A stretch of DNA of 64,000 bases, taken from positions 253,260-317,259 of the IMG/VR virus record IMGVR_UViG_3300032242_003291; one strand, written 5' to 3'. Positions 28,543 to 64,000 of the stretch are shown piece after piece (the stretch's first letter is position 1; every line of letters begins with the position of its first letter). The notes under the pieces were generated by a model. That model did not search any database. It was not told where the DNA came from and saw nothing but the letters and a program-made list of their open reading frames with translations. Both the position numbers and the translations under genes were made by a program.

Positions 28543-28544
28543 AT

Positions 28545-28569: not shown

Positions 28570-28575
28570 AATTAA

Positions 28576-40215: not shown

Positions 40216-40249
40216 CTTATATAAATATTTTTGTTTTTACTTTATGGTA

Positions 40250-43204: not shown

Positions 43205-43271
43205 TTATGATGTTATTATATCCTATAAGTATAGGTTTTAATGATATTTTGTATAGGTTTATCATATCTAA

Positions 43272-44131: not shown

Positions 44132-44144
44132 TATCTTAAATATT

Positions 44145-49137: not shown

Positions 49138-52046
49138 TTTATTTGTAGTACGTTATTATAAAGTTTAGTTTTACTGTTTGTTCCAACTATTTCAATAATA
49201 TATGTCTTATCTGTTAAATGAATATTTGAAATGTAAAATAAAAAATATTGAAATAAATTTTGATTAGATAATGATTCGACAATTTCTCCATTAATTTGTT
49301 TTATTACAAAATCAACATTTTCGTTAATGCGTTTTGAGCCTAAAAAAGAATTTTTTTCAAAGAAAATTGTATCATTTTGATAATAAACCAAGACCTCTTC
49401 AGAATCTAAAACTGTGTTACCATAGTCTTTTTGTATACCTATAAATCTTTCTTTTGTTTTTAGTCCGTGAAATACTGCAATATCATTTTGATGGTTTGGT
49501 AATTTAACATAATTAGAAATTCCTGTCATATGGAACGGATGATTTACATCTGTAAACTTATCCATTTCAATATTATTTGTTTCTTCGATATCACATAAAT
49601 GTAAAGCTTTTTGAAGATTATGTTTTGATAAAACCACATTAGCAGAATCTTCGTCATGTAATGTAAAAATTCCAACTTCAGTTCCTTTATATTCTTGATA
49701 CATTTGAATTTGTTCTTCAAAAAACCATTTGGAGTTTGCATCAAACAACATTACATTAGTTTTTCTCCTTGGATATACACAAACATTAACTCCTGCTTTG
49801 TCTGCCAAAATACCAACAGTATCTGTCCATTTTTCGCCTTCCCTAATTCCACTTAGGTATAGTCTATCATGGATATGGGAATTAATCAACGGATAATTTT
49901 CTAATTGGTTGAAATAAGTTGATATGTCGTCAGCCGATACCGTTAGATAAATGTCACTATCAATAAAAATAAATTTTTTATCAGGATATTGATTGATAAC
50001 ATCAATCATTAATTTTGGTTTACTGCTGATTATATTTTCATCTCTACCCTTATCGTCTTTGTTACCTTTTTCAATATCAATTCTTCTTAAAATAAATTGC
50101 TCACTTGTTAAAAATTTAGATGGTATTTGATAATCAAAATTAATTGTATAAATGACACACTTTCTATTGGAATAATTATGTATTGATTCCATTAGATATT
50201 TTACTGTGGATGAATAATTTTCTGTAAATCCAAAAACCCAATAAAAATCATCTATGAATTTTTTATCATATTTGGCATAAATTTGATTTCCAACTTTATC
50301 AAATTTTGTATGTTCTTTTTTATAAAAATGATACAAAAATATTTCATCTTCGTTAATGAAGTTTTTACCTCCTCTCCAAACACAATCATATAAGTTTTTT
50401 CCAAATGAATTTGTGTTCATAGAATAAATCAACTTAACATCAAATTTATTCTTAGCCAATCTATCCATAACATCTTCTTCATAACATTTGACATCAGGAC
50501 TTTGAAAACATTCAATAAATTCATTTGTTTTATAAAATGTTCTTAACTCCTCAGTATTTTTTATTATTAAAAAAGGGCCCGATAACCTATCATGATATGT
50601 TTTTTCAGCGACAGAAATTATATCATGTTTTCCGAGTAAAGGGTAAACGTATTTAACAACATCACCAAATAAAGTATCAATATCATAACATCCAAAATAC
50701 TCATAATCCATTATATACTCCGAGAATATATCACCAAGAGATGCTTTCAAGTCACAAGTTTTCTTGTTATTTTTCAATTCAATTTTTGAACCAACTAAGT
50801 TTGATATTTTATCAACAATATTATTAAGGTCTGTTTTGATAACTCTATAATTTGGAGAATCTAGACTTATATCTTGGTCGGTTACAAATAAAAAATCAAC
50901 ATTTTTTAAATTTTTTGTTGTTTCATAATGAAACCAAAAATAATCGGGTATTTTACCAAGCCATAATTGTATCAAAACAATTTTTTTTCTGTAATCTTTT
51001 TGTAATATGATTTCTTTTGTTTCCCTATCACGAAAAACTATTTTTTTATCATCAAACCCTTTTTCGACAAATATCCAATAATTTAATTGAGGTTGTAAAT
51101 CAAGACTAAAAAAATCAATTAAATTATTTTCAAACCCTTCATATACTGAAATTTCAACTCTTTGCTCACTATATTTTTTATTTAAAAAATGAATCTTTTT
51201 TTTGTCGTCAGAAAAATAGGTTATTTCAATTTTTTTAGGATTATTTTTCATGTACCTATTTTTTATTTTATTTTCGATTGCTATCTTATATTCGTCAGCA
51301 TACTTATATTTTATTTTATCATTACTTTGAACTGAATTAACAGGTTTTTGCCATCTAGTTTTATCTGAATCTATTGATACCGCAAACTGTACTCTTTCAC
51401 ACTCTTCTATTAAATGATTGATACCATTGTGTTGGTAACATAATAAAAGAGCTCTCTCAATATTTAATGAATCTTGTTTTTCAAGAAATTTAAAATTATT
51501 TTCATCACATATATAATTACCTCCTCCTAATACTTTGTCTGAAAATTTACTGTCAAAAATATGATGTCTATCAGTGACACCGAAATATGATTCCGCTTCA
51601 GGAACGTATAACTTTCCCAAAGGTAATATAGGATGGTCTTTTACATAATAATAATCTGAACGAGATAATATTATCCTATCATATTCCAACAAGACATCTT
51701 TTTTATTTTTGAGGATATAATCTCTAAAAGCCAAAATTATAGCACCAGAACCGATGGCATTATCTATTCCACCCATAAAACCACTATGTTTATTAAGTTT
51801 GAAAATATAATCCCAGTTTCCTTCAAATGAATTTGAATAATAATCTCTCCAATTATCATATTCGGGCAACTCCCAAATATATTTTGCTCTTTTGTATAAT
51901 GAAGGAGTTTTATCATTTGTTTCTCCAAAACATAATGCTAAATCTGCATTATAAGGAGATAGAAGATGTTTATAAATTGTCTCCCAAGTTTCTTCACCAC
52001 CACGAGGATTACCCATTAATATGACTAAAGTTTTTTCCATTAACAA
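49134..52046 (-). CDS. multidomain glycosyltransferase-like protein (includes DUF6625-like and GT-A DxD domains)
   Basis: LSRSD..TDRH; WLGKIPDYF...KTCDLK...YDIDTLFG; SKP...FIDSD...DED. Confidence 0.7.
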   Translation of the reverse strand: MLMEKTLVILMGNPRGGEETWETIYKHLLSPYNADLALCFGETNDKTPSLYKRAKYIWELPEYDNWRDYYSNSFEGNWDYIFKLNKHSGFMGGIDNAIGSGAIILAFRDYILKNKKDVLLEYDRIILSRSDYYYVKDHPILPLGKLYVPEAESYFGVTDRHHIFDSKFSDKVLGGGNYICDENNFKFLEKQDSLNIERALLLCYQHNGINHLIEECERVQFAVSIDSDKTRWQKPVNSVQSNDKIKYKYADEYKIAIENKIKNRYMKNNPKKIEITYFSDDKKKIHFLNKKYSEQRVEISVYEGFENNLIDFFSLDLQPQLNYWIFVEKGFDDKKIVFRDRETKEIILQKDYRKKIVLIQLWLGKIPDYFWFHYETTKNLKNVDFLFVTDQDISLDSPNYRVIKTDLNNIVDKISNLVGSKIELKNNKKTCDLKASLGDIFSEYIMDYEYFGCYDIDTLFGDVVKYVYPLLGKHDIISVAEKTYHDRLSGPFLIIKNTEELRTFYKTNEFIECFQSPDVKCYEEDVMDRLAKNKFDVKLIYSMNTNSFGKNLYDCVWRGGKNFINEDEIFLYHFYKKEHTKFDKVGNQIYAKYDKKFIDDFYWVFGFTENYSSTVKYLMESIHNYSNRKCVIYTINFDYQIPSKFLTSEQFILRRIDIEKGNKDDKGRDENIISSKPKLMIDVINQYPDKKFIFIDSDIYLTVSADDISTYFNQLENYPLINSHIHDRLYLSGIREGEKWTDTVGILADKAGVNVCVYPRRKTNVMLFDANSKWFFEEQIQMYQEYKGTEVGIFTLHDEDSANVVLSKHNLQKALHLCDIEETNNIEMDKFTDVNHPFHMTGISNYVKLPNHQNDIAVFHGLKTKERFIGIQKDYGNTVLDSEEVLVYYQNDTIFFEKNSFLGSKRINENVDFVIKQINGEIVESLSNQNLFQYFLFYISNIHLTDKTYIIEIVGTNSKTKLYNNVLQIK

Positions 52047-52086
52047 ATTACCAATTGATTATTTAATTTAGTTTTTAAAACCACAC

Positions 52087-52665
52087 TTATTTTTTTTTGA
52101 ATTTTGCAGGGACTCCAACGTAAACCCCACTTGTTACTATGTTTTTAACCACAGTCGCATTAGCACCTATTATTACATTTGAACTAACGTGTATTTTTTC
52201 TTTAATTGATGAGTTATTACCCATATAAACATTTGAACTAATATTAACGTTTCCAGATACAATAGAACCTGGCATCGCACTAAAATAATCTCCAATCTTT
52301 GAATCATGACCTATTTGAACTCCTCTATTTAGTATTGCATGTGAACCTATTTTTATATTTGTTGTCAGTATTGAATAGGCCCCAATAAAACTACCTTCTC
52401 CTACTTCAATATAATCCAAAATTAATGCAGTTGGATGAACAAATGTAAAAAATTGGAGCCCTTTAGGTAATCGTTGAACCATTTCATACCTATCCTTGGA
52501 GTTTCCAATTGCAATCATTGCAACATGTTCGTTTGGGTCTAACATAGATAATGGTGATGTTTCGCTGTCAACATATTTGTCGTCAACAAATCGTTCTAAT
52601 TTAACCCCCATTTGTGCCATTACTTCTCTTGCATGACCACCATTTCCAATTAATACTTTTTTCAT
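52087..52665 (-). CDS. NeuD/PglD-like sugar N/O-acetyltransferase
   Basis: IGNGGHAREV, AIGNSKDR, VHPTA, GHDS, hexapeptide repeats, GVPAK. Confidence 0.9.
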   Translation of the reverse strand: MKKVLIGNGGHAREVMAQMGVKLERFVDDKYVDSETSPLSMLDPNEHVAMIAIGNSKDRYEMVQRLPKGLQFFTFVHPTALILDYIEVGEGSFIGAYSILTTNIKIGSHAILNRGVQIGHDSKIGDYFSAMPGSIVSGNVNISSNVYMGNNSSIKEKIHVSSNVIIGANATVVKNIVTSGVYVGVPAKFKKK

Positions 52666-53306
52666 TGTTTGTAAATTTCGTATTTTGATAAATCTGGATA
52701 TGGTAATTCCAAATCTAAATTATCTTTTTTACTTCCATCCAGATTATAAAATTGAGTCATCATCAACAATCCTCTTGCTGCAAGTTCAGGCATCATATAA
52801 AAATTCCAACCTAACATATCAAAATTATCGTCATGGTAAGAACATTCTCTTCTACCACTAAATCTGGCTCTCTTAAACCATAACATCGCCTGATAGTCAT
52901 CAGTAATTATTGCGCCTCCTTTACTCAATTTTAATGTCTTATAAGGTCCTGTAAATGATAGACACATATGTGTCCCTGAGACGTACATATCCGCAGTAAA
53001 CCTCAATGCTGAGTCAACAACATTACTTGGAAATAATCTGTAAGCCCCTTTAATTGTTTTTCCTTCAACAGGTGTGAAATTAACCTTCAATCCTGCATGA
53101 ATTATCTCACAAGGAACCGAAGGATATGTCTTCGAAGGACAGTCTACAGTGTCTCCTGTAAATGACTTCTTAACATGTTTTTCATAATATAACGCTAAGA
53201 ATAATGCGTTACTCATATTATCTAATGCAATAGCATGAGGAGCACCTGTGTAATCACACAATGTTTTCTCAAAATCTTCAGTAATTTTATGTACACCTTG
53301 TGCCAT
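52662..53306 (-). CDS. shortened DegT/DnrJ/EryC1-family sugar aminotransferase
   Basis: FEKTLCDYTGAPHAIAL, VDSA, SFTGPYKTL..KGGAIITDD, GWNFYM. Confidence 0.8.
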   Translation of the reverse strand: MAQGVHKITEDFEKTLCDYTGAPHAIALDNMSNALFLALYYEKHVKKSFTGDTVDCPSKTYPSVPCEIIHAGLKVNFTPVEGKTIKGAYRLFPSNVVDSALRFTADMYVSGTHMCLSFTGPYKTLKLSKGGAIITDDYQAMLWFKRARFSGRRECSYHDDNFDMLGWNFYMMPELAARGLLMMTQFYNLDGSKKDNLDLELPYPDLSKYEIYKQ

Positions 53307-53387
53307 TTAATTTAAGTTTTAGATTAAAAATATAATTGACATGTTTTATATTTTCAACTTTATATTTTGTGAAACAAATCACCTTTT

Positions 53388-54353
53388 TTATGACCGATAC
53401 ATAATCTCGACGTCATTTATCAAAGTTAAATTTTCCTCAATAGTGAAATCAATGTTAAAATATTTTATATCATTAATGAATGCCTTTGCGTTTTTTATAT
53501 CTGTAATTTCAACTTTTTTTGTATTCCAAGTTTTTGGTTGAATTTTTAAATTTGTAAAAAAATTGTCATTGATTATTAAATCAAGAGAAACTTCAATACT
53601 TGTTCCGTTATGAATAAAATAATTTAAATCATCACCACTTCTAAAAAAAGTAAAAGCAATTTTACTTAAAATATTTTCTGACATAATTTCACATTTTCCA
53701 AAATCTAAGAATTTCTCTAACTCTTGGTGATTCAATTTTAATACTTTTTGATTTTCAAATAACAACTCATAAACAGTTCTTTCACTTGAAAATAAATCAC
53801 TATCTAAATGAACTTTTTTATACAAGTCAAAGATTTTTTTATAGTTGTATTCAAATGTTTCAAAGTGAAATTTTTCCAAATTTATTGAAATTAAATTTCC
53901 AATAATATTACCTCTGTCGCTCTCATAGATAACAACATCGTTGTTTTCAAGTTTACTTTTGTTTATTTCAAGAATACTCAAATCTTTGATTAGTGCGTCA
54001 TATTCAAGAACATGAACTATTTTATATTCGGCATTTTTTAAAAAGGACAAAGGAAGTTGCCACAATCTAAGTATCGCAGGTACATGACTTGAAGGAAAGA
54101 AATAAGATTTATGCATAATATAAAAATCATCGTTGGCAAAGAATCTTTTTCCTTTCAATGAGTTGTCAGTAATAAATGGATTATTTTTATCATAAAAATA
54201 AAAATCAACATCTTCTACAATATCAAAAGGTAACACACAATGACTGGCAATACAAATTTTATACTTTGAATTAATTTGACGAATTAATTTTTTTAAAATA
54301 AGTTTTTTTTCGCTTGTGTTTGAAAAATCCGTTATAAGTACTATCTCACTCAT
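53388..54353 (-). CDS. glycosyltransferase-like hypothetical protein
   Basis: IASH, YDKNN, LEYDAL (DxD-like); lies in the glyco-locus. Confidence 0.55.
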   Translation of the reverse strand: MSEIVLITDFSNTSEKKLILKKLIRQINSKYKICIASHCVLPFDIVEDVDFYFYDKNNPFITDNSLKGKRFFANDDFYIMHKSYFFPSSHVPAILRLWQLPLSFLKNAEYKIVHVLEYDALIKDLSILEINKSKLENNDVVIYESDRGNIIGNLISINLEKFHFETFEYNYKKIFDLYKKVHLDSDLFSSERTVYELLFENQKVLKLNHQELEKFLDFGKCEIMSENILSKIAFTFFRSGDDLNYFIHNGTSIEVSLDLIINDNFFTNLKIQPKTWNTKKVEITDIKNAKAFINDIKYFNIDFTIEENLTLINDVEIMYRS

Positions 54354-54404
54354 TATTCAATAATTTATTTCCATTTGTAATTTTATTTCAAAAAATAAAA
54401 CCTT

Positions 54405-55169
54405 TTAAACCCAAAAATCGATATTTAGCCATTCGTCATTTACTGTATGACAATTTATTGATGGTTGTACTGTCCCTATTTTACAACTCTCACTATTAAT
54501 TAAATTAATTAAATCTTCGTCATTTTTATAGTTTAAAATACACGGATATTTATAAAAATTTTCATTTAGTATTGTTTTTCTACCCATTAATGCCATTTCT
54601 ATTGCTGTTGCCATTCCATTACCGTCAGACAAATTTAAGTTAAGAAAAGATTTATCGTAATAATTATTTTTCAAATAATTTATATCATAGTAATCATTAA
54701 TATTAAAATGATTCGTAGTTATTATTTCATAATTAATTTGTTTTTGTATTTGTTTTAATTTTTCAACGTTAAATTGATTACTCCATCCATTTTTAAAACC
54801 AGTATATGCATATATTTTATCCCCCAAAACATTAGGTTCAAACAATGAGTAATCTTTAACTTCTATCGTTACGTTTCTACAATTAACATTATCAGGTATT
54901 TTTGAAATTAATCTAACTTCTTCTAATATATTAATAATGAACAAATCATCTGTATTTGTGACTATATCAAAATTTGGTAGGTCATATGGGTTTGTAAGAA
55001 ATATAAATTTGTATGATTTATGATTTTGTATTTGATGAGATAATTCGTTTCCGCCAAAAAATATACATGGTTTGTTCACATCATAATATTCATCAAAATT
55101 ATATCTTTCAATAAAACCTTTTTTAAAAAAATTAACAGAAGGGGCAACAAGTGTTTGAGATATTCTCAT
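54405..55169 (-). CDS. glycosyltransferase-like hypothetical protein
   Basis: DGNGMATAIEMALMGRK resembles the GT-B E-x7-E region. Confidence 0.5.
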   Translation of the reverse strand: MRISQTLVAPSVNFFKKGFIERYNFDEYYDVNKPCIFFGGNELSHQIQNHKSYKFIFLTNPYDLPNFDIVTNTDDLFIINILEEVRLISKIPDNVNCRNVTIEVKDYSLFEPNVLGDKIYAYTGFKNGWSNQFNVEKLKQIQKQINYEIITTNHFNINDYYDINYLKNNYYDKSFLNLNLSDGNGMATAIEMALMGRKTILNENFYKYPCILNYKNDEDLINLINSESCKIGTVQPSINCHTVNDEWLNIDFWV

Positions 55170-55243
55170 TATATTATTATTTTTTTTATTTTTTATTTAT
55201 TTTTGAATTTGACAGCAACACCCACATTCAAATAACGCTAATT

Positions 55244-55870
55244 TCATTTTTTCTTATAATAAGAATATTCACCAAAATCGCCAACCAACTCACAATGTGG
55301 TGTTAAAAATTTATTAATAGAATTACGAACACTATCCCAACTGGAATCGTCCATAATAATATATCCTCCCTTCTTAACTAAAGGTAAATAAAGTAAAATG
55401 TCTCTTGATACATTCATCTCATTGTGATTTCCGTCAATATGTAATACATCTATCGATTCTTTTTCAAAATGAATGAATGAGTCCTCTGATGGTTCTCTAA
55501 TTATTGTAATTGTTTTCGATAAATCATTATTTTCAATAATTTCACAAACATTTTTGTAAATTGAATCAAAGGTTTCTTGTCCTTTTAATAATTCGTTATA
55601 AAAAAATTCTTCTTGATTTTTATCCCAAAAAGGGATTTCATTTTTTGACATTTCAAAAGACCATGGGTCAATACCAATAATTTTTCCTTCAATTTTTTCT
55701 AAAACCTCTGCAAAAGAAAATAAAGAACTACCTTTATACACTCCAATTTCAACACAAACTTTACTGTGAGTTGTTTTAATTAAATTATGTATAAGATTTC
55801 TTTTCTCATCAATACACCAACCTCCTTGGTCATAAACATCATTTTTAATTAATCCTCTTAAATTTCTCAT
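55244..55870 (-). CDS. class I SAM-dependent methyltransferase
   Basis: VEIGVYKGSS, GIDPW, LHIDGNH, GGYIIMDD. Confidence 0.9.
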   Translation of the reverse strand: MRNLRGLIKNDVYDQGGWCIDEKRNLIHNLIKTTHSKVCVEIGVYKGSSLFSFAEVLEKIEGKIIGIDPWSFEMSKNEIPFWDKNQEEFFYNELLKGQETFDSIYKNVCEIIENNDLSKTITIIREPSEDSFIHFEKESIDVLHIDGNHNEMNVSRDILLYLPLVKKGGYIIMDDSSWDSVRNSINKFLTPHCELVGDFGEYSYYKKK

Positions 55871-55871
55871 G

Positions 55872-56576
55872 TTATTTTTTTTGTATTATAATTTTTATAT
55901 TATCGTAACTATCGTAGTGTGTCCCAATTAGTTTCCAATCGGTGTTACCTTTCAAAACGTGTTGGTAAATATGAACCCCTTTACCGACCATTGGATAAGG
56001 AATAACCATATTATCTTCTTGACCATTAGCATGAAACCACTGAACATATGTACCTTGTTTATAATTGTCATCGATTACAATAATACTACCTTTTAACATT
56101 TTTGATTCGATTGCTTTAAACTCTTCCCAACCATGTAATGCACTTGGAAATGCATCAAATAAATTAAAATCCCAACTGTCTAAATGGACAAAATTAGGTA
56201 TTTCTTCAATATTTTTTAAAAACGAAACAGAATCACTTACGTGTATTGAATAATCCAAATTAGGAATAGCATCTTCAAATATTTTTACACTTTTTTCAAC
56301 AATGTTAGATGAGATGTCAACTGACGTCATTTTACCATTTGTGTTTTTTGCAACATACCCTAAAAAAAGACCAAATAACCCATCGTTATAGTTTGATGAT
56401 GCTCCAGTTTCTAAAACAATCAATTTATCAAAATTGAATTCATCATTAATTGAGTCAATAACTGTTTCACATTGTTGTCTCCTAATTCTGTGTGCATTTG
56501 AATTTTCATAATCAAAAATGACTGTCTTCATATGACTTAAGTATTCCTCATATCCCTCTAAAAAATTTTGTTTCAT
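55872..56576 (-). CDS. class I SAM-dependent methyltransferase
   Basis: VLETG, SVDIS, DSVSFL, HLDSWD, IVIDDN. Confidence 0.8.
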   Translation of the reverse strand: MKQNFLEGYEEYLSHMKTVIFDYENSNAHRIRRQQCETVIDSINDEFNFDKLIVLETGASSNYNDGLFGLFLGYVAKNTNGKMTSVDISSNIVEKSVKIFEDAIPNLDYSIHVSDSVSFLKNIEEIPNFVHLDSWDFNLFDAFPSALHGWEEFKAIESKMLKGSIIVIDDNYKQGTYVQWFHANGQEDNMVIPYPMVGKGVHIYQHVLKGNTDWKLIGTHYDSYDNIKIIIQKK

Positions 56577-56765: not shown

Positions 56766-59054
56766 ATGAGTAAATCAAAAATTTTTGCACATGGTTCCTA
56801 TGTTGGTAACACAGGATATAATCAACACACAAGAGATTTTTTCAGACATCTTAGTAAACACGCAGATATAAAAGTTAGAAACTTTACGATAGGTAATTCT
56901 TGGAAGGGTTATTCCGAAAGACCACATGATAACGAAACTTACTTTAATGCAACCGATGAAAAACTATTATATCAACAAGTTCTTTGGAATGGTGACAACA
57001 CAAGAAGTAATTTTCCAATTTATTCAGATAAATCAAAAAATTTCACACCTGATGTTAACATTATATTATGTGAAACAAATCACCACCTTTTTTATGACCA
57101 ATACAATGGTCCGAAAATTGCATATAACGTATGGGAGTCTACATTGCAACCTAAAGAATACTTCAACAAATTAAAAGAATTTGATGAAATGTGGGTACCA
57201 TCAAAATGGCAAAGAGACTGTACCATAGCTCAAGGTTATGACCCAAACAAAATTAAAGTCGTTCCTGAAGGTGTTGATGTTAATACATTTTACCCCGATA
57301 ACTCAGTAAATCATCCATTAACAAAAGACAAGTTTACATTCTTTTTAGCGGGAAGATGGGATTATAGAAAATCTATCAAGGAAATTATTGAAACATTTAT
57401 AAAGACTTTTAATAACAACGAACCTGTTGAGTTAATTGTTTCTGTTGATAATCCATTTTCGAATGATGGATTAAACTCAACTGAAGAAAGATTGAAACAT
57501 TATGGGTTAGAAGATGATAGAATTAAAATTCTCCATTTCCCACCAAGAGAGGAATACATTAGATTGTTAAAATCTTGTAATGTATTTGTATCATGCGCAA
57601 GAGCAGAAGGTTGGAACTTACCACTTATTGAGGCTATGGCTTGTGGTACTCCGTCAATTTATTCAGATTGTTCAGGTCAGTTGGAATTTGCAGAGGGTAG
57701 AGGTATACCTGTTAAAATATCGCATGAATTACCTGTAAGTGCTAGTACATATAATCACTTCAACGATAATGTTGGAAACTATTATGAACCTGATTTTTAT
57801 GATTTGGGTATCAAAATAAAAAATGTGTTTGAGGATTATAAAAAGTATAAAATTTTTGCATTAGTAGAATCAGAACAAATTAGAGAAGAGTTTAGTTGGG
57901 AAAATGTTGCTAAAATAGGTATTGATACTATTAATGATTTTTTAGACAGAAAACCTTGGTTAAATAAACCAATCAAAACTAATGAAATTAAAATTAGTTA
58001 TTTAGATGGTCCAAGAGTTGAAGTATCAGGTGACGAAAAGAAAGATTATTTTGTTGAATTTATTGATAGTACCGATGGAAAGGTAATACATTCTCAAACT
58101 ATTAGTAATAACATGTGGGTTTCTTGTAGTAAAAAATACTATATTCCTTGGATAATTAAAATTAATGGTGAAGTTTACGATGAACTGAATTTAGAAGGAA
58201 AAACGGTAATGATTTCACTTGAATCAAAAGCTTTAGGTGATACTATATCTTGGGCACCATATGCTGTTGAATTTCAAAAGAAACATAATTGTAAGGTGTT
58301 ATTGTCCACTTTCAAAAATAACTTCTTTGAAGGTTTAGAATCATATAAAAATATAACCTTTATCAAACCAGGTGAATCTCATGGTTGTGATGTAATATAC
58401 AGAATCGGTTGGTTTAAAAAAGATAAGAAATGGGAAGATAGAGACAAAAATCCAAATCAACCAAACTTGATTCCACTTCAACAAGCAGCAACCGACATTT
58501 TAGGTTTAGAATATAAAGAACTTAACTTTGGTTTAAATTTTGAAAAAAAGGAAAAACCTATGGAAAAAGATTATGTAGTGTTCGCACCAAATGCAACTTC
58601 AGGTTGTAAAGAGTGGGATTATAATCATTGGGTGACATTATCTAAACTCATTAAAGAATTAGGATATGATGTTTTAACATTAACACAAAAACCATTTCAC
58701 ATAGATGGTGTATTAAATATTTGGGATGAACCTTTGGACGTTGTTGCAAACTACCTTTATCATGCCAAGGCTTACGTAGGGTTGGGTTCGGGATTATCTT
58801 GGTTTAATTGGGCTTTAGGGAATTATTCATTTATGGTTAATGGTTTTGCAAGACCTGACCACGAATTTACAACAAACATTACAAAAATTTATAACGAAAA
58901 TACTTGTATATTCTGTTGGAATGATGAAGTTTTTGTTTTTGACCCTGGTAATTGGAATTGGTGTCCAGTATATGAAGGGACAAAAAAACAACACGTTTGT
59001 CAAAGGTCTATTACACCATTACAAGTATTTCAACAACTAACAACTAAAATATAA
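56766..59054 (+). CDS. GT4 glycosyltransferase fused to a TibC/AAH-like protein O-heptosyltransferase
   Basis: EGWNLPLIEAMACG (GT4); SKKYY, SKALGDTISW, VGLGSGLSW, CIFCWN...WCP...C..SITP. Confidence 0.85.
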   Translation: MSKSKIFAHGSYVGNTGYNQHTRDFFRHLSKHADIKVRNFTIGNSWKGYSERPHDNETYFNATDEKLLYQQVLWNGDNTRSNFPIYSDKSKNFTPDVNIILCETNHHLFYDQYNGPKIAYNVWESTLQPKEYFNKLKEFDEMWVPSKWQRDCTIAQGYDPNKIKVVPEGVDVNTFYPDNSVNHPLTKDKFTFFLAGRWDYRKSIKEIIETFIKTFNNNEPVELIVSVDNPFSNDGLNSTEERLKHYGLEDDRIKILHFPPREEYIRLLKSCNVFVSCARAEGWNLPLIEAMACGTPSIYSDCSGQLEFAEGRGIPVKISHELPVSASTYNHFNDNVGNYYEPDFYDLGIKIKNVFEDYKKYKIFALVESEQIREEFSWENVAKIGIDTINDFLDRKPWLNKPIKTNEIKISYLDGPRVEVSGDEKKDYFVEFIDSTDGKVIHSQTISNNMWVSCSKKYYIPWIIKINGEVYDELNLEGKTVMISLESKALGDTISWAPYAVEFQKKHNCKVLLSTFKNNFFEGLESYKNITFIKPGESHGCDVIYRIGWFKKDKKWEDRDKNPNQPNLIPLQQAATDILGLEYKELNFGLNFEKKEKPMEKDYVVFAPNATSGCKEWDYNHWVTLSKLIKELGYDVLTLTQKPFHIDGVLNIWDEPLDVVANYLYHAKAYVGLGSGLSWFNWALGNYSFMVNGFARPDHEFTTNITKIYNENTCIFCWNDEVFVFDPGNWNWCPVYEGTKKQHVCQRSITPLQVFQQLTTKI

Positions 59055-59935
59055 TGAAGACAATATTAATTGAACTTATGTCAGGTTCTCTTGGTGACAC
59101 CATAGCAATTATGCCATGTGTAGAATATTTTATATCAAAAAATGATGATGATGTTCTTTTGAAGATAAATCCAAGATATCATTTTTTATTCACTAACTCA
59201 TACCCAACAATTAAATTCTACCAAGGCAACGAACATTTTGATAAAAAAATTCAACTACATTATAATTTTAATTTACCCCTACAAACAGGATTTGCACAAC
59301 AACTTGGATATGTTAATTGGACCTATATCAGACCAAAAGTCGATGTTAATGTAAAAGAAAGACCTATAAAATCCAAGTATGTTTCAATTAGCATACATTC
59401 AACATCTCAACTCAAATATTGGAATCATCCAATTGGAAAAAAATCACAACCATTATCTCCTTATTGGACCGAATTAAACGGATTATTGAGAAAGTCAGGT
59501 TATACTCCTGTTGTTGTAGAAAAAGATGAAATGTTTGGAATACCCCCACTCAGAAATGGTATGCCATCAAAATCAAATAATAAAATTGGTCTTAGTTTAG
59601 AAGACACAATAAATTATATATATCACTCAGATTTTTTCATAGGACTATCTTCAGGACTATCTTGGCTTGCACATGCAATGGGAAAAAAAGTTGTAATGAT
59701 ATCAAACTTCTCGGATGAAACTCATGAATTTGATTTATCCTGTGAAGATTATATAAGAATAACTAATAAATCAGTTTGTCATGGTTGTTGGAATAAAATT
59801 AATCAAGATTATAATTTTGATTCATCTGATTGGTATTGGTGTCCCAAACATAAAGATACTCCAAGAGAGTTTGAATGTCATACTTCAATAACACCTGATT
59901 ATGTTATTGAACAAATTAAACAATGGATAAATTAA
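59054..59935 (+). CDS. TibC/AAH-like protein O-heptosyltransferase
   Basis: SLGDTIA, KYWNHP, FIGLSSGLSWLAHAMGKKVVMISNFS, CHGCWN...WCPKH...FECHTSITP. Confidence 0.88.
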   Translation: MKTILIELMSGSLGDTIAIMPCVEYFISKNDDDVLLKINPRYHFLFTNSYPTIKFYQGNEHFDKKIQLHYNFNLPLQTGFAQQLGYVNWTYIRPKVDVNVKERPIKSKYVSISIHSTSQLKYWNHPIGKKSQPLSPYWTELNGLLRKSGYTPVVVEKDEMFGIPPLRNGMPSKSNNKIGLSLEDTINYIYHSDFFIGLSSGLSWLAHAMGKKVVMISNFSDETHEFDLSCEDYIRITNKSVCHGCWNKINQDYNFDSSDWYWCPKHKDTPREFECHTSITPDYVIEQIKQWIN

Positions 59936-59939: not shown

Positions 59940-60938
59940 ATGTTTGAATTATTAAGTTACGATATACAAAAAGATGAAAAAAAAATTGTAATACAAATTT
60001 TCTTTCGTAACAACTCGGACAACTCCTATGATGTTAATACATTATTTGAGGATTCAATCTTCAATCAATGTCAGAAATTTAGAACTATGACAGTAAACCC
60101 AAATTCAACTCATTGGGTTTCTTGGGATTTATCTCAGGATTTGGATACCGCATCAGATGAGATAAATGGATTACAGTTGAGGGCATTATGGGGTGCCAAT
60201 TTCAAAATATTAATTGATGACAAAGTTGTTGCAGAATTTCCATTAAAATATACTTTTACCAATTTAAATCTAAGAAAAGGATTGAAAAATTTTTCACCAT
60301 TCAATAAGAAAAAGTTTTGGATTCTTGGCGATTCTCATTCAGGATTTTACACAAACACGTCCCCTGATTATTTAAAAACATCAAAATACGACATAATACC
60401 GTCAGGTTTATTGGGGCTATCGTTAAATAACTTTTTAAATGAAGAATTTGATAGATGGTTTGACTCTTTACCAATTTGGGATAATGATATTGTTGCAATT
60501 GATGTTGGTGAACTCGATATAAGATGTGGTCTTTTTCACTTTGCAAGTAAAAATGACTTAAATGTATATTCCATTACTGATGATTTATTAAAAAGATACT
60601 TTGATTTTCTATTAAGATTTAAACAAAAGTACAAAAATGAGTTGGTTATATTGACACCTAACAGACCAATAAAAGATGGGTGCCTCGATGGAAACGCAGA
60701 ATATTTCAAATTAACCATATCTAATACAAGTGAAAGACTTGAACTATGGAATTATTTCAATATTAAATTAAAATTATTCTGTGAAGAAAACTCAATAAAA
60801 TACTGGGATATCAAACACATGTATACAGATAAAGATGGAACATTGTTCAATGACATACTTTATTACAACGATATACACATAAAAGTCAAAGAACCAATGT
60901 TGTTTGACTTAAGACATAAAATAGAAAATAATTTTTAA
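59940..60938 (+). CDS. SGNH/GDSL-like esterase or acyltransferase
   Basis: ILGDSH, GELDIR, DIH. Confidence 0.65.
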   Translation: MFELLSYDIQKDEKKIVIQIFFRNNSDNSYDVNTLFEDSIFNQCQKFRTMTVNPNSTHWVSWDLSQDLDTASDEINGLQLRALWGANFKILIDDKVVAEFPLKYTFTNLNLRKGLKNFSPFNKKKFWILGDSHSGFYTNTSPDYLKTSKYDIIPSGLLGLSLNNFLNEEFDRWFDSLPIWDNDIVAIDVGELDIRCGLFHFASKNDLNVYSITDDLLKRYFDFLLRFKQKYKNELVILTPNRPIKDGCLDGNAEYFKLTISNTSERLELWNYFNIKLKLFCEENSIKYWDIKHMYTDKDGTLFNDILYYNDIHIKVKEPMLFDLRHKIENNF

Positions 60939-60939: not shown

Positions 60940-61659
60940 ATGGATTTATCTAAATTTGATTGGGGTTGGATGGACAAACCAACAACTAGAACACTATCAA
61001 GTAAAGGGATTACAAAGTCATATGGACAATGGCATAAAGACATCATTACAGATGAAATATTCGAACAAAAATTATATGAACAATTTTTTCCTGTTGAAGA
61101 AGGAGATATTGTTATGGACTTCGGTGCAAGTGTAGGTCCATTTACATATTCCATCTTAGATAAGAAACCAAAACATGTTTATTGTTTTGAGCCGAGTCCA
61201 CAAGAAATTAGTACATTAATTAAAAACACTCAAGACGGACCTGTTACAGTAATAAATAAGGGTATTTCTGACGTTGAGGGTGAGTTTGAATTTAATTTGT
61301 TTGGTGTTGAAGATGGAACAAGAATCGCTAAATCAACTACGTTTGATTCCATTAAAAAAGAGTTTAATATTACTAAAATTGATTTTATCAAAACAGATTG
61401 TGAAGGTGGTGAATACTCTATTTTTAACAATAAAAATATTTTTTGGATTAAAGAAAATGTTAGAAAGGTAGTCGGTGAGTGGCATTTAGATAGTCCTCAA
61501 AGAAAGGAGCAATTCAGAGTTTTCAGAGATACTTATTTACGTTTGTTTCCAAATATTGAAGTTTTTGCTATTGATGGTGTCAATATTAAATGGGAATTAT
61601 GGAAAGACCATTTTATTGATTATTATCGTCAAATTATAGTTTATATCGATAATAGATAA
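60940..61659 (+). CDS. FkbM-family methyltransferase
   Basis: VMDFGASVG, FEP, IKTDCEGGE, GEWH. Confidence 0.9.
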   Translation: MDLSKFDWGWMDKPTTRTLSSKGITKSYGQWHKDIITDEIFEQKLYEQFFPVEEGDIVMDFGASVGPFTYSILDKKPKHVYCFEPSPQEISTLIKNTQDGPVTVINKGISDVEGEFEFNLFGVEDGTRIAKSTTFDSIKKEFNITKIDFIKTDCEGGEYSIFNNKNIFWIKENVRKVVGEWHLDSPQRKEQFRVFRDTYLRLFPNIEVFAIDGVNIKWELWKDHFIDYYRQIIVYIDNR

Positions 61660-61695: not shown

Positions 61696-64000
61696 TTACT
61701 TTATTGGTTTGTATTCTAAAAGAACCTTTTCAATATCTTTACGTTCAGCTTGAATGAAGAAACTTGTATTTATTTTTTCTGTCTCAGAATCTATATACAC
61801 TTTATTATCTTCGACTTTAACAACGTAGTGAATTGTTGCTGTCCCAATTGGTGTAAGTTGAACTGTGATAGTATCTTCGTGTACTAAATTTACCCAATAT
61901 TCAGGTAATTCAATTACATTTGAAGTTACTATACCTCTTACGTAAACTCCATGTTCTGGTCCTTCTAACACACCGTATCTTAATCTGAATCCTTCTTTTG
62001 TTGGGTGAGTGATATCAAATGATTTAGATGCCGCTGTTAAATTACCTGTCATCGTAGTATCTCCTGTCACATTCAAGGTTGCTCCATCATATCTTAGACC
62101 TGCATTACCTTGAACCGTGCCAGCTGTTCCCGTTGCAGTTACAATCCAAGTATTTGTATTGTTATTGATAACTGCTGAGTTTCCTGACGTACCAGAACTT
62201 CCTGAGCTACCACTCGAACCAGATGTTCCAGAACTTCCTGACGTGCCGCTAGCACCTGAAACACCACTTGTTCCTGAAGAACCAGATGAACCTGAGCTAC
62301 CACTTGTTCCTGAGCTTCCTGAAGAACCAGATGTTCCTGAGCTTCCTGAAGAACCAGATGTTCCTGAGCTACCACTTGAACCAGATGTTCCTGAGCTACC
62401 ACTTGAACCAGATGTTCCTGAAGAACCAGATGAACCTGAGCTACCACTTGTTCCCGAAGAACCGCTCGAACCAGAAGTTCCTGAGCTACCACTTGAGCCA
62501 CTTGTTCCTGATGAACCAGAGCTACCACTTGTTCCTGATGAACCTGATGAACCTGAGCTACCACTTGTTCCTGAGCTACCGCTTGAACCAGACGTCCCTG
62601 ATGAACCAGACGTTCCAGAGCTTCCTGAAGTACCACTTGAGCCACTTGTTCCTGATGAGCCAGAGCTACCACTTGTTCCTGATGAGCCAGAGCTACCACT
62701 TGAACCAGACGTTCCTGAAGAACCTGAACTACCACTTGTTCCTGAAGAACCACTTGAGCCAGATGTTCCTGAACTACCAGATACACCTCTTAAACCTGCA
62801 ATAGATATTGTCCATGAAGACGCTAAAGTAGTTCCAGAGTTATAATCAGCAGCAATCGCGAAAGTTGTTCCTGTTATACTTACTGTACCTTCAAAGAAAT
62901 TAGAAGTAGTATTTATCGCTCTTACTCTGTCACCTGTAACGAATGCACCTTGTTGATTCACAGTTAAAGTTATTGTACCAGTAGATGCTGGAGTTGCGGA
63001 TGTAGTTGAAGTTACATTATTATAACCAAGTCCTGAAGTTCCTGATGTTCCTGATGAGCCAGAGCTACCACTTGTTCCTGATGAGCCTGAACTACCACTT
63101 GTTCCAGAAGAACCTGATGAACCTGAGCTACCAGATGTTCCTGATGAACCTGATGAACCTGAAGTTCCTGAGCTACCACTTGAGCCACTTGTTCCTGATG
63201 AACCTGATGAACCTGAGCTACCACTTGTTCCAGAAGAACCTGAGCTACCACTTGTTCCTGATGAACCAGATGTTCCAGAGCTTCCTGAAGTACCACTTGA
63301 GCCACTTGTTCCTGAAGAACCTGAGCTACCACTTGTTCCAGAAGAACCAGATGAGCCAGAGCTACCACTTGTTCCCGAAGAACCTGAGCTACCACTTGTT
63401 CCTGATGAACCAGATGTTCCAGAGCTTCCTGAAGTACCACTTGAGCCACTTGTTCCTGATGAGCCAGAGCTACCACTTGTTCCTGAAGAACCCGAGCTAC
63501 CCGATGTTCCTGATGAACCAGATGTTCCAGAGCTTCCTGAAGTACCACTTGAGCCACTTGTTCCTGAAGAACCTGAAACGCCTCTCACACCTGCGATAGA
63601 TATTGTCCATGAAGACGCTAAAGTCGTTCCCGAGTTATAATCAGCTGCAATTGCGAAAGTTGTTCCAGTTATACTCACAGTACCTTCAAAGAAGTTAGAT
63701 GTAGTGTTCACTGCTCTTACTCTATCACCTGTTATAAACGCTCCTTGTTGATTTACGGTTAATGTTATAGTTCCTGTTGATGCTGGTGTTACCGATGTAG
63801 TTGAAGTTACATTACTATAACCAAGTCCTGATGTTCCTGATGTTCCTGAAGAACCTGAGCTACCACTTGTTCCTGAGCTACCACTTGAGCCAGATGTTCC
63901 TGATGAACCTGAGCTACCACTTGTACCTGAGCTACCGCTTGAACCACTTGTTCCAGAAGAACCAGATGAGCCAGAGCTACCACTTGTTCCTGAGCTACCG
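61696..64000 (-). CDS. Gly-Ser/Thr repeat fibre protein, 5'-truncated by the window
   Basis: Frame is open to the window edge; (GSS/GTS)n blocks, duplicated ~85-aa domain, C-terminal KSFDITHP...LEGPEHGVYVRG...AERKD fibre domain. Confidence 0.9.
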   Translation of the reverse strand, partial: GSSGTSGSSGSSGSSGTSGSSGSSGTSGSSGSSGTSGSSGSSGTSGSSGSSGTSGTSGLGYSNVTSTTSVTPASTGTITLTVNQQGAFITGDRVRAVNTTSNFFEGTVSITGTTFAIAADYNSGTTLASSWTISIAGVRGVSGSSGTSGSSGTSGSSGTSGSSGTSGSSGSSGTSGSSGSSGTSGSSGTSGSSGTSGSSGTSGSSGSSGTSGSSGSSGSSGTSGSSGSSGTSGSSGTSGSSGTSGSSGTSGSSGSSGTSGSSGSSGSSGTSGSSGSSGTSGSSGSSGTSGSSGSSGSSGTSGSSGSSGTSGSSGSSGTSGTSGLGYNNVTSTTSATPASTGTITLTVNQQGAFVTGDRVRAINTTSNFFEGTVSITGTTFAIAADYNSGTTLASSWTISIAGLRGVSGSSGTSGSSGSSGTSGSSGSSGTSGSSGSSGSSGTSGSSGSSGTSGSSGTSGSSGTSGSSGTSGSSGSSGTSGSSGSSGSSGTSGSSGSSGTSGSSGSSGTSGSSGSSGTSGSSGSSGSSGTSGSSGSSGTSGSSGSSGTSGSSGSSGTSGSSGSSGTSGSSGSSGSSGTSGVSGASGTSGSSGTSGSSGSSGSSGTSGNSAVINNNTNTWIVTATGTAGTVQGNAGLRYDGATLNVTGDTTMTGNLTAASKSFDITHPTKEGFRLRYGVLEGPEHGVYVRGIVTSNVIELPEYWVNLVHEDTITVQLTPIGTATIHYVVKVEDNKVYIDSETEKINTSFFIQAERKDIEKVLLEYKPIK

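What the first reader, a model, noticed from the sequence alone, without database searches (positions are those of the whole stretch)
61696..64000. Proline-free collagen-like fibre in which nearly every X and Y is Ser or Thr
Seen: strict Gly periodicity of three (GSS/GTS) over three blocks, interrupted by near-identical ~85-aa domains (about 62780-63035 and 63570-63830) with many synonymous differences. Known: Ser-rich triplets have low triple-helix propensity, while glycosylated Thr stabilises vent-worm collagen and BclA is glycosylated on its collagen region. Inference: a fibre whose folding depends on dense O-glycosylation by the adjacent enzymes, or a polyglycine-II bundle.
Basis: partly seen in the sequence, partly recalled or inferred. 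Interest (0 to 1): 0.72.

Follow-up and report, generated by a model that had tools for sequence, protein, structure and literature searches.

The report
Serine-threonine collagen-like giant phage fibre
This is the tail end of a very long, probably three-stranded collagen-like fibre gene of a freshwater jumbo phage, built only from Gly-Ser-Ser and Gly-Thr-Ser triplets and sitting next to two phage enzymes related to a bacterial protein-serine sugar transferase, which suggests (but does not show) a sugar-coated viral collagen.

Summary
Window 61696-63999 (- strand) is a 5'-open ORF of 767 codons. It has 152 uninterrupted Gly-X-Y triplets (91 GSS, 52 GTS, no Pro), two 82-aa domains (dN/dS 0.047) and a C-terminal beta-sandwich tip.

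The window is the end of a 317-kb T4-like jumbo phage contig from lake metagenomes. The missing 5' half lies at the contig start (C1:3-4073, N-domain plus 329 more triplets). Synteny with a relative that carries one 3744-aa gene shows the assembly broke inside a single gene of at least 2124 aa.

The 82-aa domain occurs widely between canonical collagen repeats. In another relative the Ser/Thr triplets run into Pro-containing triplets and a trimerising S74 chaperone domain. A trimer model puts both GXY flanks in full inter-chain contact (0.74 against 0.00 for controls). A collagen-type trimer is therefore well supported, and a polyglycine-II bundle is not.

Both convergent neighbours are TibC/BAHT homologues with the catalytic Asp and the iron-finger cysteines intact, but they lack the adenine-binding Arg. 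The cassette recurs beside such fibres, including in a cultured Microcystis phage. However, only 1 of 7 independently found Ser/Thr fibres has it nearby. Glycosylation is plausible but unproven, and dependence of folding on it is untested.

The parts
61696..63999 (-). 3' part (767 codons plus stop) of the giant Ser/Thr collagen-like fibre gene. It is cut by the contig end. The 5' part lies outside the window at G000:C1:3-4073 (-).
63820..63999 (-). GXY block 1: 20 triplets (GSS 12, GTS 7), truncated by the contig end.
63580..63825 (-). Copy 1 of the 82-aa beta-barrel 'node' domain.
   Evidence: A single 309-nt unitig at depth about 92 covers it in the source run.
63025..63591 (-). GXY block 2: 63 triplets (GSS 37, GTS 23).
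62785..63030 (-). Copy 2 of the 82-aa node domain (5 aa and 34 nt differences from copy 1, dN/dS 0.047).
62176..62796 (-). GXY block 3: 69 triplets (GSS 42, GTS 22).
61699..62175 (-). Neck (AVINNNTNTWIVTATGTAGT...) plus the C-terminal beta-sandwich tip domain (aa 609-767). The domain falls in phrog_17490 and has no Pfam family.
56766..59054 (+). 762-aa fusion protein. The N-terminal half is a GT4 glycosyltransferase. The C-terminal half (aa 412-754) is a TibC/BAHT-like protein O-glycosyltransferase that includes the beta-barrel region.
59054..59935 (+). 293-aa TibC/BAHT-like glycosyltransferase. It has the catalytic domain and the iron finger but no N-terminal beta-barrel.
59940..60938 (+). 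332-aa protein with no family match. It lies inside the cassette, between the second TibC-like gene and the FkbM gene.
   Evidence: no hits
60940..61659 (+). FkbM-family methyltransferase. It travels with the GT cassette in related loci.
47747..56576 (-). Tentatively associated sugar-tailoring genes: a DegT-like fragment, two PglD-like hexapeptide acyltransferases, an FkbM methyltransferase, a CmcI-like O-methyltransferase and a DUF6625 protein.
   Evidence: Association with the fibre is inferred from proximity only.

Best explanation
The finding is the C-terminal third or less of one very large virion fibre gene of an uncultured freshwater T4-like jumbo phage.

Architecture of the protein, N to C:
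- An N-terminal attachment domain of about 370 aa, encoded at the other end of the contig.
- At least 481 Gly-X-Y triplets, in which X is Ser or Thr and Y is almost always Ser (with some Asp or Asn in the N-terminal half).
- Small 82-aa beta-barrel node domains set in a fixed register between the triplet runs.
- A short neck.
- A C-terminal beta-sandwich tip of a type shared with many aquatic phage fibre proteins.

Three chains most likely form a parallel collagen-type triple helix at least about 0.4 micrometre long. The tip and node domains would hold the chains in register. The result would be a thin, flexible, highly hydrophilic filament that carries an adhesion or receptor-binding tip.

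The convergent neighbouring cassette has a GT4-TibC fusion, a second TibC-like enzyme, an unknown protein and an FkbM methyltransferase. It most likely primes Ser hydroxyls of this fibre with a sugar, extends that sugar and methylates it. That would make a mucin-like coat which adds hydration and stiffness and may shield the fibre.

Shown here: the sequence anatomy, purifying selection, homologies, synteny and the one-gene topology. Modelled: trimer contacts along the GXY flanks. Inferred: the triple helix in vivo, glycosylation of this protein, the sugar's identity, and where the fibre sits on the virion.
For: Anatomy and selection.

Phage identity: the window is the last 64 kb of a 317,259-bp virus contig. 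It has a Gp23 capsid gene. Its nearest capsid and fibre-tip relatives are in Flavobacterium phage immuto. The source is lake or freshwater runs.

One gene across the contig break:
- The contig start carries a same-strand ORF with an N-domain plus 329 triplets that runs off the end.
- Relative G001 has one contiguous 3744-aa gene with that N-domain, four node domains and about 1007 triplets, abutting the same GT cassette.
- The four genes upstream of our contig-start ORF are collinear with those upstream of the G001 gene.
- G007 (294,914 bp, 98% complete) is broken in the same way.
- 11 of 14 contigs carrying the N-domain end inside the repeat.

Collagen-type trimer:
- Pfam Collagen scores 208.7 bits.
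- The node domain has 270 copies in 150 proteins, 133 of them flanked on both sides by GXY of canonical composition, with invariant Gly columns in both flanks.
- In G007 the GSS/GTS triplets are followed in the same frame by 143 GAQ/GPQ/GPT triplets and an S74 chaperone domain.
- The G003 and G005 fibres end in S74-like domains.
- The homotrimer model scores 0.74 against a best control of 0.00. In the tool's calibration that mark was reached by 20 of 30 solved homo-oligomers and 1 of 23 monomers. Residues 1-27 and 100-130, which are the GXY flanks, are all in contact.

Glycosylation:
- TibC homology, E 1.8e-34 and 6.8e-32.
- Asp110, Thr226, Lys230, Trp305 and the four iron-finger Cys are invariant in 24 phage sequences. 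Residue roles come from PMC4358343.
- TibC modifies Ser and not Thr, and here Y is Ser in 148 of 152 triplets.
- The ORF1-ORF2 pair lies in tandem at 54% identity or more in 10 related loci, 6 of which also carry an FkbM homologue at 50% or more.
- Ser/Thr GXY ORFs lie within 10 kb in 7 of 32 loci found through the enzyme.
- The pairing also occurs in Microcystis phage Mel-JY01, in huge phage LR756501, and in one locus found from the fibre side (L071).
- Further sugar-tailoring genes lie in the window.
Against: - No experimental data exist for any member of this group.
- Ser and Thr are poor triple-helix formers in host-guest peptides. The Bucl8 paper quotes a Tm of 33.0 C for GAS against 47.3 C for POG.
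- The trimer model used my own alignment and three copies, which lies outside the tool's calibration. It may also reflect memory of collagen structures.
- The enzyme-fibre link is only partial. 25 of 32 enzyme loci have no Ser/Thr GXY ORF within 10 kb. Only 1 of 7 independently found Ser/Thr GXY fibres has a TibC-like gene in the flanks retrieved, and that includes a T4-like locus with full 10-kb flanks and none.
- Glycosyltransferases and fibre genes share hypervariable regions in aquatic myophages and have been read as host LPS modifiers (PMC7029224).
- Arg286, the adenine contact in TibC, is never Arg in the phage clade. The genome also has no GmhA-like gene. The donor is therefore unknown.
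- The junction itself was not bridged by reads, so the true repeat number is unknown.
Confidence: 0.6

Rival explanations
1. The fibre is an unmodified, proline-free collagen triple helix. Its stability would come from great length, trimeric node and tip domains, a hydration network of Ser/Thr hydroxyls, and cold lake water. The neighbouring TibC-like enzymes would act on something else, such as another virion protein or a host surface protein, and sit nearby only because fibre genes and glycosyltransferases share a hypervariable region.
For: - Bucl8 (Gly-Ala-Ser)n gives a triple-helix CD signal without modification.
- Only 1 of 7 independently found Ser/Thr GXY fibres has a TibC-like gene nearby.
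- 25 of 32 enzyme loci lack such a fibre within 10 kb.
- Glycosyltransferases co-locate with fibre genes in pelagimyophages.
- The habitat is freshwater or lake.
Against: - The cassette abuts the fibre's 3' end within a few bases in G001.
- It recurs next to such fibres in distant phages, with 34-35% enzyme identity in Mel-JY01 and LR756501.
- BAHT enzymes are protein-Ser transferases. This fibre, with Ser at Y in 97% of triplets, is the obvious Ser-rich protein in the locus.
Confidence: 0.28
2. The Ser/Thr/Gly region is not a triple helix. It would be an extended, intrinsically disordered, mucin-like spacer, glycosylated or not, that tethers beta-barrel beads and a tip domain. The Gly period would be a legacy of a collagen ancestor or of repeat amplification.
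For: - Ser and Thr have low triple-helix propensity.
- The monomer AF2 model gives the flanks pLDDT 47-75.
- Some 108-144-nt units are 93-95% identical, showing recent duplication.
Against: - No Gly is lost in 152 triplets here or 329 at the contig start, despite dS of about 0.66 between domain copies and 19 different codings of GSS.
- Gly columns are invariant on both sides of the node domain across 62 sequences.
- The triplets run in frame into canonical triplets and an S74 trimerisation domain in G007.
- The trimer model places all flank residues in contact.
Confidence: 0.08
3. The region forms a polyglycine-II bundle, that is antiparallel PPII helices packed within one chain, as in snow-flea antifreeze protein or the glycine-rich domain of T4-type gp38 adhesins.
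Against: - There is one Gly per triplet rather than two.
- No turn or loop motifs break runs of 63, 69 and 329 triplets, so the chain cannot fold back on itself.
- The architectural slot is occupied by canonical collagen repeats in relatives.
- The features of PGII bundles are from my own knowledge and were not tested with a tool.
Confidence: 0.02
4. The repeat array is partly an assembly artefact. Repeats may be collapsed or chimeric at a contig end, so block lengths and the second domain copy are unreliable.
For: - The contig ends inside the repeat.
- Unitigs in the repeat are 40-300 nt long, with summed word depth of 3000-11000 against about 92 for the unique domain. Many alternative joints are seen.
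Against: - The two domain copies differ at 34 positions, almost all synonymous.
- The reading frame is intact for 2304 nt.
- Independent contigs from other samples show the same architecture, some as complete genes.
Confidence: 0.1

Closest known systems
Phage and prophage collagen-like tail fibre proteins, such as the E. coli O157 prophage collagen-like proteins (PMC3368898) and the three canonical collagen-like fibre genes in this window at 2118-8891
   Same: Long Gly-X-Y stalk in a phage fibre protein, non-collagen domains at both ends and between blocks, modular swapping of C-terminal domains. Relatives of this gene carry the same S74 intramolecular chaperone end.
   Different: The triplets here are only GSS and GTS, with no Pro, Gln, Ala or charged residues. 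The known ones, and the window's own three, use GAQ, GPT, GPQ and GAT. This gene's C-terminus is not an S74 domain. Its length is extreme: at least 481 triplets here, about 1007 in G001, and an open frame of 4508 aa in G005.
Bucl8 of Burkholderia pseudomallei and B. mallei, (Gly-Ala-Ser)n collagen-like region (PMC7682875)
   Same: Proline-free, compositionally extreme GXY repeat with Ser at Y, attached to a trimeric domain. CD evidence of a marginally stable triple helix.
   Different: Bucl8 has 6-38 triplets with Ala at X. It is part of an outer-membrane efflux protein, not a virion fibre, and no dedicated glycosyltransferase is linked to it.
BclA exosporium protein of Bacillus anthracis and B. 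cereus, and Riftia cuticle collagen (glycosylated collagens)
   Same: A hydroxy amino acid at the Y position of a collagen-like repeat as the proposed site of O-glycosylation, with sugars thought to add hydration and stability (for BclA; Riftia from my own knowledge).
   Different: Those have Pro at X and Thr at Y. Here X is Ser or Thr and Y is Ser. The candidate enzymes here are BAHT-type, not those of BclA. Glycosylation here is inferred, not shown.
TibC/AAH bacterial autotransporter heptosyltransferases (BAHT family; PDB 4RAP, 4RB4; PMC4358343)
   Same: The two neighbouring proteins align over the whole catalytic domain. They keep the catalytic Asp, the beta-phosphate Thr/Lys, Trp305 and the four iron-finger cysteines.
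   Different: They are phage-encoded, and there is no autotransporter substrate in the locus. One copy is fused to a GT4 domain and the other lacks the N-terminal beta-barrel. The adenine-contact Arg286 is replaced in all 24 phage sequences. No ADP-heptose pathway gene was found in the phage.
Mycobacteriophage virion glycosylation (Freeman et al. 2023, as cited in PMC12619734)
   Same: A precedent that phage-encoded glycosyltransferases decorate virion structural proteins.
   Different: There the glycans sit on C-terminal tails of capsid and tail-tube subunits. Those enzymes are not BAHT-like, as far as I know.

Membership tests
Collagen-like (triple-helix repeat) proteins, Pfam PF01391 | Uninterrupted Gly at every third residue over many triplets | tested here: met
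   152 of 152 triplets in the window part and 329 of 329 in the contig-start part.
Collagen-like (triple-helix repeat) proteins, Pfam PF01391 | Match to the family profile above its curated cut-off | tested here: met
   208.7 bits against a cut-off of 27.2, in 7 stretches.
Collagen-like (triple-helix repeat) proteins, Pfam PF01391 | Imino acids (Pro/Hyp) or charged/Gln/Thr-rich X and Y positions that stabilise the helix | tested here: not met
   No Pro in 304 X/Y positions. 96% are Ser or Thr, and no charged residues occur apart from 2 Arg.
Collagen-like (triple-helix repeat) proteins, Pfam PF01391 | Adjacent non-collagen domain that trimerises and sets the register | tested here: inconclusive
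   The homotrimer model of GXY-node-GXY scores 0.74 against 0.00 for controls. Relatives end in S74 chaperone domains. There is no experimental oligomer state.
Collagen-like (triple-helix repeat) proteins, Pfam PF01391 | Physical triple helix (CD maximum near 220-225 nm, cooperative melt, protease resistance) | not testable with these tools
   Needs recombinant protein.
BAHT family (TibC/AAH) - applies to the two neighbouring genes | GT-B catalytic domain homologous to TibC, with catalytic base Asp110 | tested here: met
   E 1.8e-34 and 6.8e-32 to 4RAP. Asp is aligned in both and invariant in 24 phage sequences.
BAHT family (TibC/AAH) - applies to the two neighbouring genes | Iron-finger motif: four Cys (339, 342, 358, 370 in TibC) | tested here: met
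   All four align and are invariant in 24 sequences. The role is taken from PMC4358343.
BAHT family (TibC/AAH) - applies to the two neighbouring genes | N-terminal beta-barrel domain (TibC residues 1-97) | tested here: inconclusive
   ORF 56766-59054 aligns from TibC residue 28 and hits Pfam TibC_1st at 24.3 bits, below the cut-off of 27. ORF 59054-59935 starts at TibC residue 98 and lacks it.
BAHT family (TibC/AAH) - applies to the two neighbouring genes | ADP-heptose donor: sugar and nucleotide contacts Thr226, Lys230, Trp305, Arg286 | tested here: inconclusive
   Thr, Lys and Trp are invariant. The Arg286 position is T/V/S/L/A/I and never Arg. No GmhA-like SIS gene is present in the phage genome.
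BAHT family (TibC/AAH) - applies to the two neighbouring genes | Autotransporter beta-helix passenger as acceptor; dodecameric ring | not tested
   No autotransporter is seen in the locus. The oligomer state was not modelled.
Phage fibres and spikes with a C-terminal S74 intramolecular chaperone | Peptidase_S74 domain at the C-terminus | tested here: not met
   Only the Collagen family hits P0001. Its C-terminus belongs to phrog_17490, of unknown function. Relatives G003, G005 and G007 and the window's three canonical collagen-like genes do have the S74 domain.
Polyglycine-II bundle proteins (snow-flea antifreeze, gp38-type glycine-rich domains) | Short PPII segments joined by turns and packed antiparallel within one chain; Gly at two of three positions | tested here: not met
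   One Gly per triplet. Runs of 63, 69 and 329 triplets have no breaks. The feature list is from my own knowledge.

The most novel reading that the evidence does not exclude
Freshwater jumbo phages may carry a previously undescribed appendage: a sub-micrometre to micrometre-long, proline-free Ser/Thr collagen. Its Y-position serines would be hyper-glycosylated by a phage-specific branch of the BAHT protein-serine glycosyltransferases, using a donor other than ADP-heptose. The sugar coat would be needed for the triple helix to fold or persist. In effect this would be a viral 'mucin-collagen' bottlebrush that extends the phage's capture radius.
Probability: 0.22. Interest if true: 0.85.

Novelty: new variant of a known kind. 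Interest (0 to 1): 0.68.

Why it matters
- It would extend the sequence rules for collagen. A triple helix with neither imino acids nor charged residues, hundreds to thousands of residues long, would be the most extreme natural test of what holds a collagen helix together.
- It would move the BAHT enzymes, so far known only from autotransporter virulence factors, into phages and onto a new kind of substrate. Phage virion glycosylation has very few documented cases.
- These genes break metagenome assemblies. Both ends of two near-complete jumbo phage contigs, and 11 of 14 related contigs, end in them.
- They are annotated on the wrong strand in at least one GenBank phage record, so the family is systematically hidden.
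- A cultured host-phage pair (Microcystis phage Mel-JY01) carries both the fibre type and the enzyme, which makes the hypothesis directly testable.

Tried and rejected
- Megablast of 20 kb of the window against GenBank phages found no match.
- The window has no tRNA genes.
- PHROGs and Pfam gave nothing for the fibre's N-domain, the node domain, ORF 59940-60938 or several neighbours.
- Fold searches of the tip domain gave only a marginal match: best Z 8.4 to the C-terminal beta-sandwich of the cyanophage Pam1 tailspike, with no Foldseek hit at E <= 0.001. Fold searches of the node domain gave Z of 6.6 or less, a generic small beta-barrel. They support 'fibre-tip-like' and 'small beta-barrel' and nothing more specific.
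I rebuilt the alignment without that row.
- Laying the source run's contigs on the contig end did not bridge the junction. Unitigs in the repeat are too short and too many.
- A search for an ADP-heptose pathway (SIS_2) and for a sugar nucleotidyltransferase in the phage genome found none.
- The reverse association test, from Ser/Thr GXY fibres to TibC-like neighbours, gave only 1 of 7.
- No alternative genetic code was needed. The frame is open under table 11.
- The polyglycine-II and disordered-linker readings were considered and ranked low. The reasons are given under rival explanations.
Full report
**What is there**

Window 61696-63999 on the minus strand is an open frame of 767 codons that runs off the window end. 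It has three Gly-X-Y blocks of 20 (truncated), 63 and 69 triplets, and not one triplet is out of register.
- Triplet types: 91 GSS, 52 GTS and 9 others.
- X is Ser or Thr in 143 of 152 triplets and Y is Ser in 148 of 152. No Pro occurs in any triplet.
- Pfam's Collagen model scores 208.7 bits against a cut-off of 27.2.
- Two 82-aa domains separate the blocks, at window 63580-63825 and 62785-63030. They differ at 5 residues and 34 nucleotides, with dS 0.66, dN 0.031 and dN/dS 0.047.
- The repeat DNA is degenerate. Register-shifted copies are 60-75% identical, and GSS is spelled by 19 different 9-mers using both TCN and AGY serine codons. GC3 is 15%, like the AT-rich genome.

The periodicity is therefore maintained by selection on the protein.

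**Where it comes from**

The window is the last 64 kb of a 317,259-bp virus contig, with an estimated completeness of 100% and no terminal repeat.
- The genome encodes a T4-type Gp23 capsid protein.
- Both the capsid gene and the fibre's C-terminal domain are closest to Flavobacterium phage vB_FspM_immuto among GenBank phages.
- The sequence is held completely by one metagenome run and partly by many lake and freshwater runs.

It is an uncultured freshwater T4-like jumbo phage, possibly of Bacteroidota. The host is a weak inference.

**The missing 5' end**

The contig start carries, on the same strand, an ORF (C1:3-4073) with a start codon. It encodes a 370-aa non-collagen N-domain that includes one node-like domain, followed by 329 uninterrupted triplets (GTS, GSS, GTD, GSN) that run off the contig start. 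Four lines of evidence say the two fragments are one gene split by the assembly of a circularly permuted genome.
1. Relative G001 has a single contiguous 3744-aa gene. Its N-domain is homologous to ours (36% identity, E 8e-71). It has four node domains, about 1007 triplets and a C-terminal domain, and its 3' end lies within a few bases of the same glycosyltransferase cassette.
2. The four genes upstream of our contig-start ORF are collinear, at up to 79% identity, with those directly upstream of the G001 gene.
3. G007, a 294,914-bp contig estimated 98% complete, is broken the same way. An N-domain ORF with 154 GSS/GTS triplets runs off its start, and an ORF at its end opens with GSS/GTS triplets.
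4. All 14 viral contigs carrying the N-domain have Pro-free Ser/Thr(Asp/Asn) triplets after it, and 11 of them end inside the repeat. Complete genes of 1530 and 1543 aa show the same N-domain, triplets, node and neck order.

The gene is thus at least 2124 aa long with at least 481 triplets. At about 0.29 nm per residue (value quoted in PMC8968730) that is at least 0.4 micrometre of helix. Reads could not bridge the junction.

**Is it a collagen-type trimer?**

- The 82-aa domain is a family of its own, with 161 cluster representatives at E <= 1e-3.
- In 150 of them I found 270 copies. 189 are followed by at least four GXY triplets, 178 are preceded by them, and 133 are flanked on both sides.
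- Those relatives use ordinary phage-collagen triplets (GAT, GPQ, GAQ), and none is Ser/Thr-only.
- In a 62-sequence alignment the Gly columns on both sides of the domain are invariant. The helix register is therefore fixed relative to the domain.
- In G007 the GSS/GTS triplets continue in the same chain into 143 GAQ/GPQ/GPT triplets and an S74 intramolecular chaperone domain, which is a trimerisation device of phage fibres. The G003 and G005 Ser/Thr fibres also end in S74-like domains.
- A three-copy model of P0001:300-429 scored 0.74 against 0.00 for the best control. In the tool's calibration this mark was reached by 20 of 30 solved homo-oligomers and 1 of 23 monomers, and my own alignment and three copies lie outside that calibration. 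Every residue of both GXY flanks is in inter-chain contact.
- The monomer model shows the domain as a confident small beta-barrel, pLDDT 95-98, with no significant PDB match.

Together these make a collagen-type parallel trimer by far the best reading. A polyglycine-II bundle is unlikely, because it needs fold-back turns that are absent from runs of 63 to 329 triplets. A merely disordered linker is also unlikely, because it would not conserve Gly so strictly.

**The tip**

Residues 609-767 are a neck plus a C-terminal domain.
- The domain has at least 900 metagenomic relatives at E <= 1e-5. Almost all are aquatic and lack a Pfam family, and it falls in phrog_17490.
- It ends a 'tail fiber-like protein' of Flavobacterium phage immuto and hypothetical proteins of many cyanomyoviruses.
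- Only 2 of 120 relatives have any GXY and none is Ser/Thr-only, so the tip is a shuffled module.
- The model is a beta-sandwich with pLDDT 88-96 over its core. The best match is Z 8.4 to the C-terminal domain of the cyanophage Pam1 tailspike, followed by other fibre tips. These matches are marginal but thematically consistent.

Ser/Thr stalks in relatives carry at least five different C-terminal modules, as expected of host-range determinants.

**The neighbours**

Four genes on the plus strand converge on the fibre gene.
- ORF 56766-59054 is a GT4 glycosyltransferase fused to a TibC-like domain (E 1.8e-34 to PDB 4RAP).
- ORF 59054-59935 is a second TibC-like protein (E 6.8e-32).
- An unknown 332-aa protein and an FkbM methyltransferase complete the set.

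TibC is the autotransporter heptosyltransferase that O-glycosylates serine, not threonine. Its defining features are catalytic Asp110, sugar and phosphate contacts Thr226, Lys230, Trp305 and Arg286, and a four-cysteine iron finger (PMC4358343).

In 24 phage sequences Asp, Thr, Lys, Trp and all four Cys are invariant, but the Arg286 position is never Arg. The phage has no GmhA-like gene and no sugar nucleotidyltransferase. It does have four SDR epimerase/dehydratase genes elsewhere, and DegT-, PglD- and methyltransferase-type genes in the window. These are therefore active-looking BAHT-family enzymes whose donor is probably not ADP-heptose.

**How strong is the enzyme-fibre link?**

From the enzyme side:
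- The ORF1-ORF2 pair lies in tandem at 54% identity or more in 10 related loci, and 6 of those also carry an FkbM homologue at 50% or more.
- 7 of 32 viral loci found with ORF2 have a Ser/Thr-only GXY ORF within 10 kb. Several others break at a contig end just beyond the cassette.
- In GenBank only 4 of 50,697 phage records hold a TibC-like gene.
- One of them is the cultured Microcystis phage Mel-JY01. It has an ORF of at least 1016 aa, unannotated and called on the wrong strand, with about 200 GTS/GSS-rich triplets, 1.7 kb from its FkbM-TibC fusion protein.
- Another is a 735-kb huge phage with a 35-triplet G-[TS]-S ORF 5 kb away.

From the fibre side:
- Ser/Thr-only GXY proteins turn out to be common in metagenomes, making up 33 of the 120 best hits to the repeat. 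Many are complete, with diverse ends.
- Of seven I looked up, only one (L071) has a GT4-TibC-like gene nearby. One T4-like locus with full 10-kb flanks has none.

I conclude that glycosylation of this fibre by the cassette is the most likely function of the cassette here, at roughly even odds. It is not a general requirement of Ser/Thr collagen-like stalks.

Dependence of folding on glycosylation remains untested. It is made less necessary by Bucl8's unmodified (Gly-Ala-Ser)n triple-helix signal (PMC7682875) and by the cold habitat.

**Comparison and novelty**

It works like a phage collagen-like fibre, and by the profile and Gly-period tests it is one. It fails the usual compositional feature of stabilising imino, charged or Gln residues. 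The same genome has three conventional collagen-like fibre genes (GAQ/GPT/GPQ with S74 ends) at window 2118-8891.

I found no paper describing Ser/Thr-only collagen-like phage fibres or phage BAHT-like enzymes. In aquatic myophages, glycosyltransferases near fibre genes have been read as host LPS modifiers. The documented case of phage virion glycosylation is in mycobacteriophages.

I rate it a new variant of a known kind. It is of good interest because the family is widespread, hidden by assembly and annotation problems, and testable in a cultured phage.

Noticed in passing
window 2118-8891 (- strand): Three further collagen-like fibre genes of 607, 628 and 1023 aa. They have conventional phage triplets ([12 protein letters not shown]), frequent one- or two-residue register breaks, and Peptidase_S74-type intramolecular chaperone C-termini. 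They account for the GC rise to 46-48% at 2-8 kb.
   Followed up: partly
window 62117-62845 (+), 62268-62804 (+), 63006-63599 (+); L067 (Microcystis phage Mel-JY01, PP395634.1) nt 1-2298: The antisense strand of GSS/GTS-coding DNA is also open and reads as (E/D)-x-P repeats. In GenBank record PP395634.1 two 'hypothetical proteins' (WWT39286.1, WWT39287.1) are called on that wrong strand, over an ORF of at least 1016 aa with Ser/Thr GXY that starts at the record's first bases.
   Followed up: partly
window 47747-56576 (- strand): A run of sugar-tailoring genes: a DegT-like ORF of only 214 aa that matches profile positions 26-98 of 360 (possibly a fragment), two PglD-like hexapeptide acyltransferases, an FkbM methyltransferase, a CmcI/TylF-like O-methyltransferase and a 970-aa DUF6625 protein.
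   Followed up: partly
G000:C1:83714-88143 (outside the window): Four adjacent SDR epimerase/dehydratase genes (Pfam Epimerase, E down to 2.4e-63). The phage remodels nucleotide sugars, yet it has no nucleotidyltransferase and no GmhA-like gene.
   Followed up: no
window 38017-47465 (- strand): Three large ORFs (732, 984 and 1106 aa) with no PHROG or Pfam match at all.
   Followed up: no
window 63400-64000, source run X1: Summed unitig word depth over the GXY-coding stretches is 3000-11000, against about 92 over the unique node domain. GSS/GTS-coding words are very abundant in these lake metagenomes, from long arrays, many related phages, or both.
   Followed up: no
L075 (ENA ERZ1764455 contig) and L076 (ENA ERZ1283883 contig): Ser/Thr-rich GXY proteins also occur in a T4-like phage about 3.2 kb downstream of a gp13 neck-protein gene, with four unnamed genes between, and in a crAss-like phage (Crass_capsid, P22_portal). 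Neither has a TibC-like gene within the flanks retrieved.
   Followed up: partly
L012 810-3491 and L032 2-3487: In two related phages, short GSS/GTS stalks (35 and 28+75 triplets) are fused to a long Gly/Cys-rich repeat domain (IVGG..N-type units). The L012 protein also has an N-terminus (MPNWKKVVLSGSNA...) like that of the Flavobacterium phage immuto tail-fibre-like protein; the L032 ORF is cut at its 5' end by the locus boundary.
   Followed up: no
window 25584-30954 (- strand): A 781-aa DNA methyltransferase-like protein (phrog_13671) and a 792-aa SbcC-like nuclease subunit (phrog_77). These are ordinary replication and recombination genes of a large myovirus.
   Followed up: no
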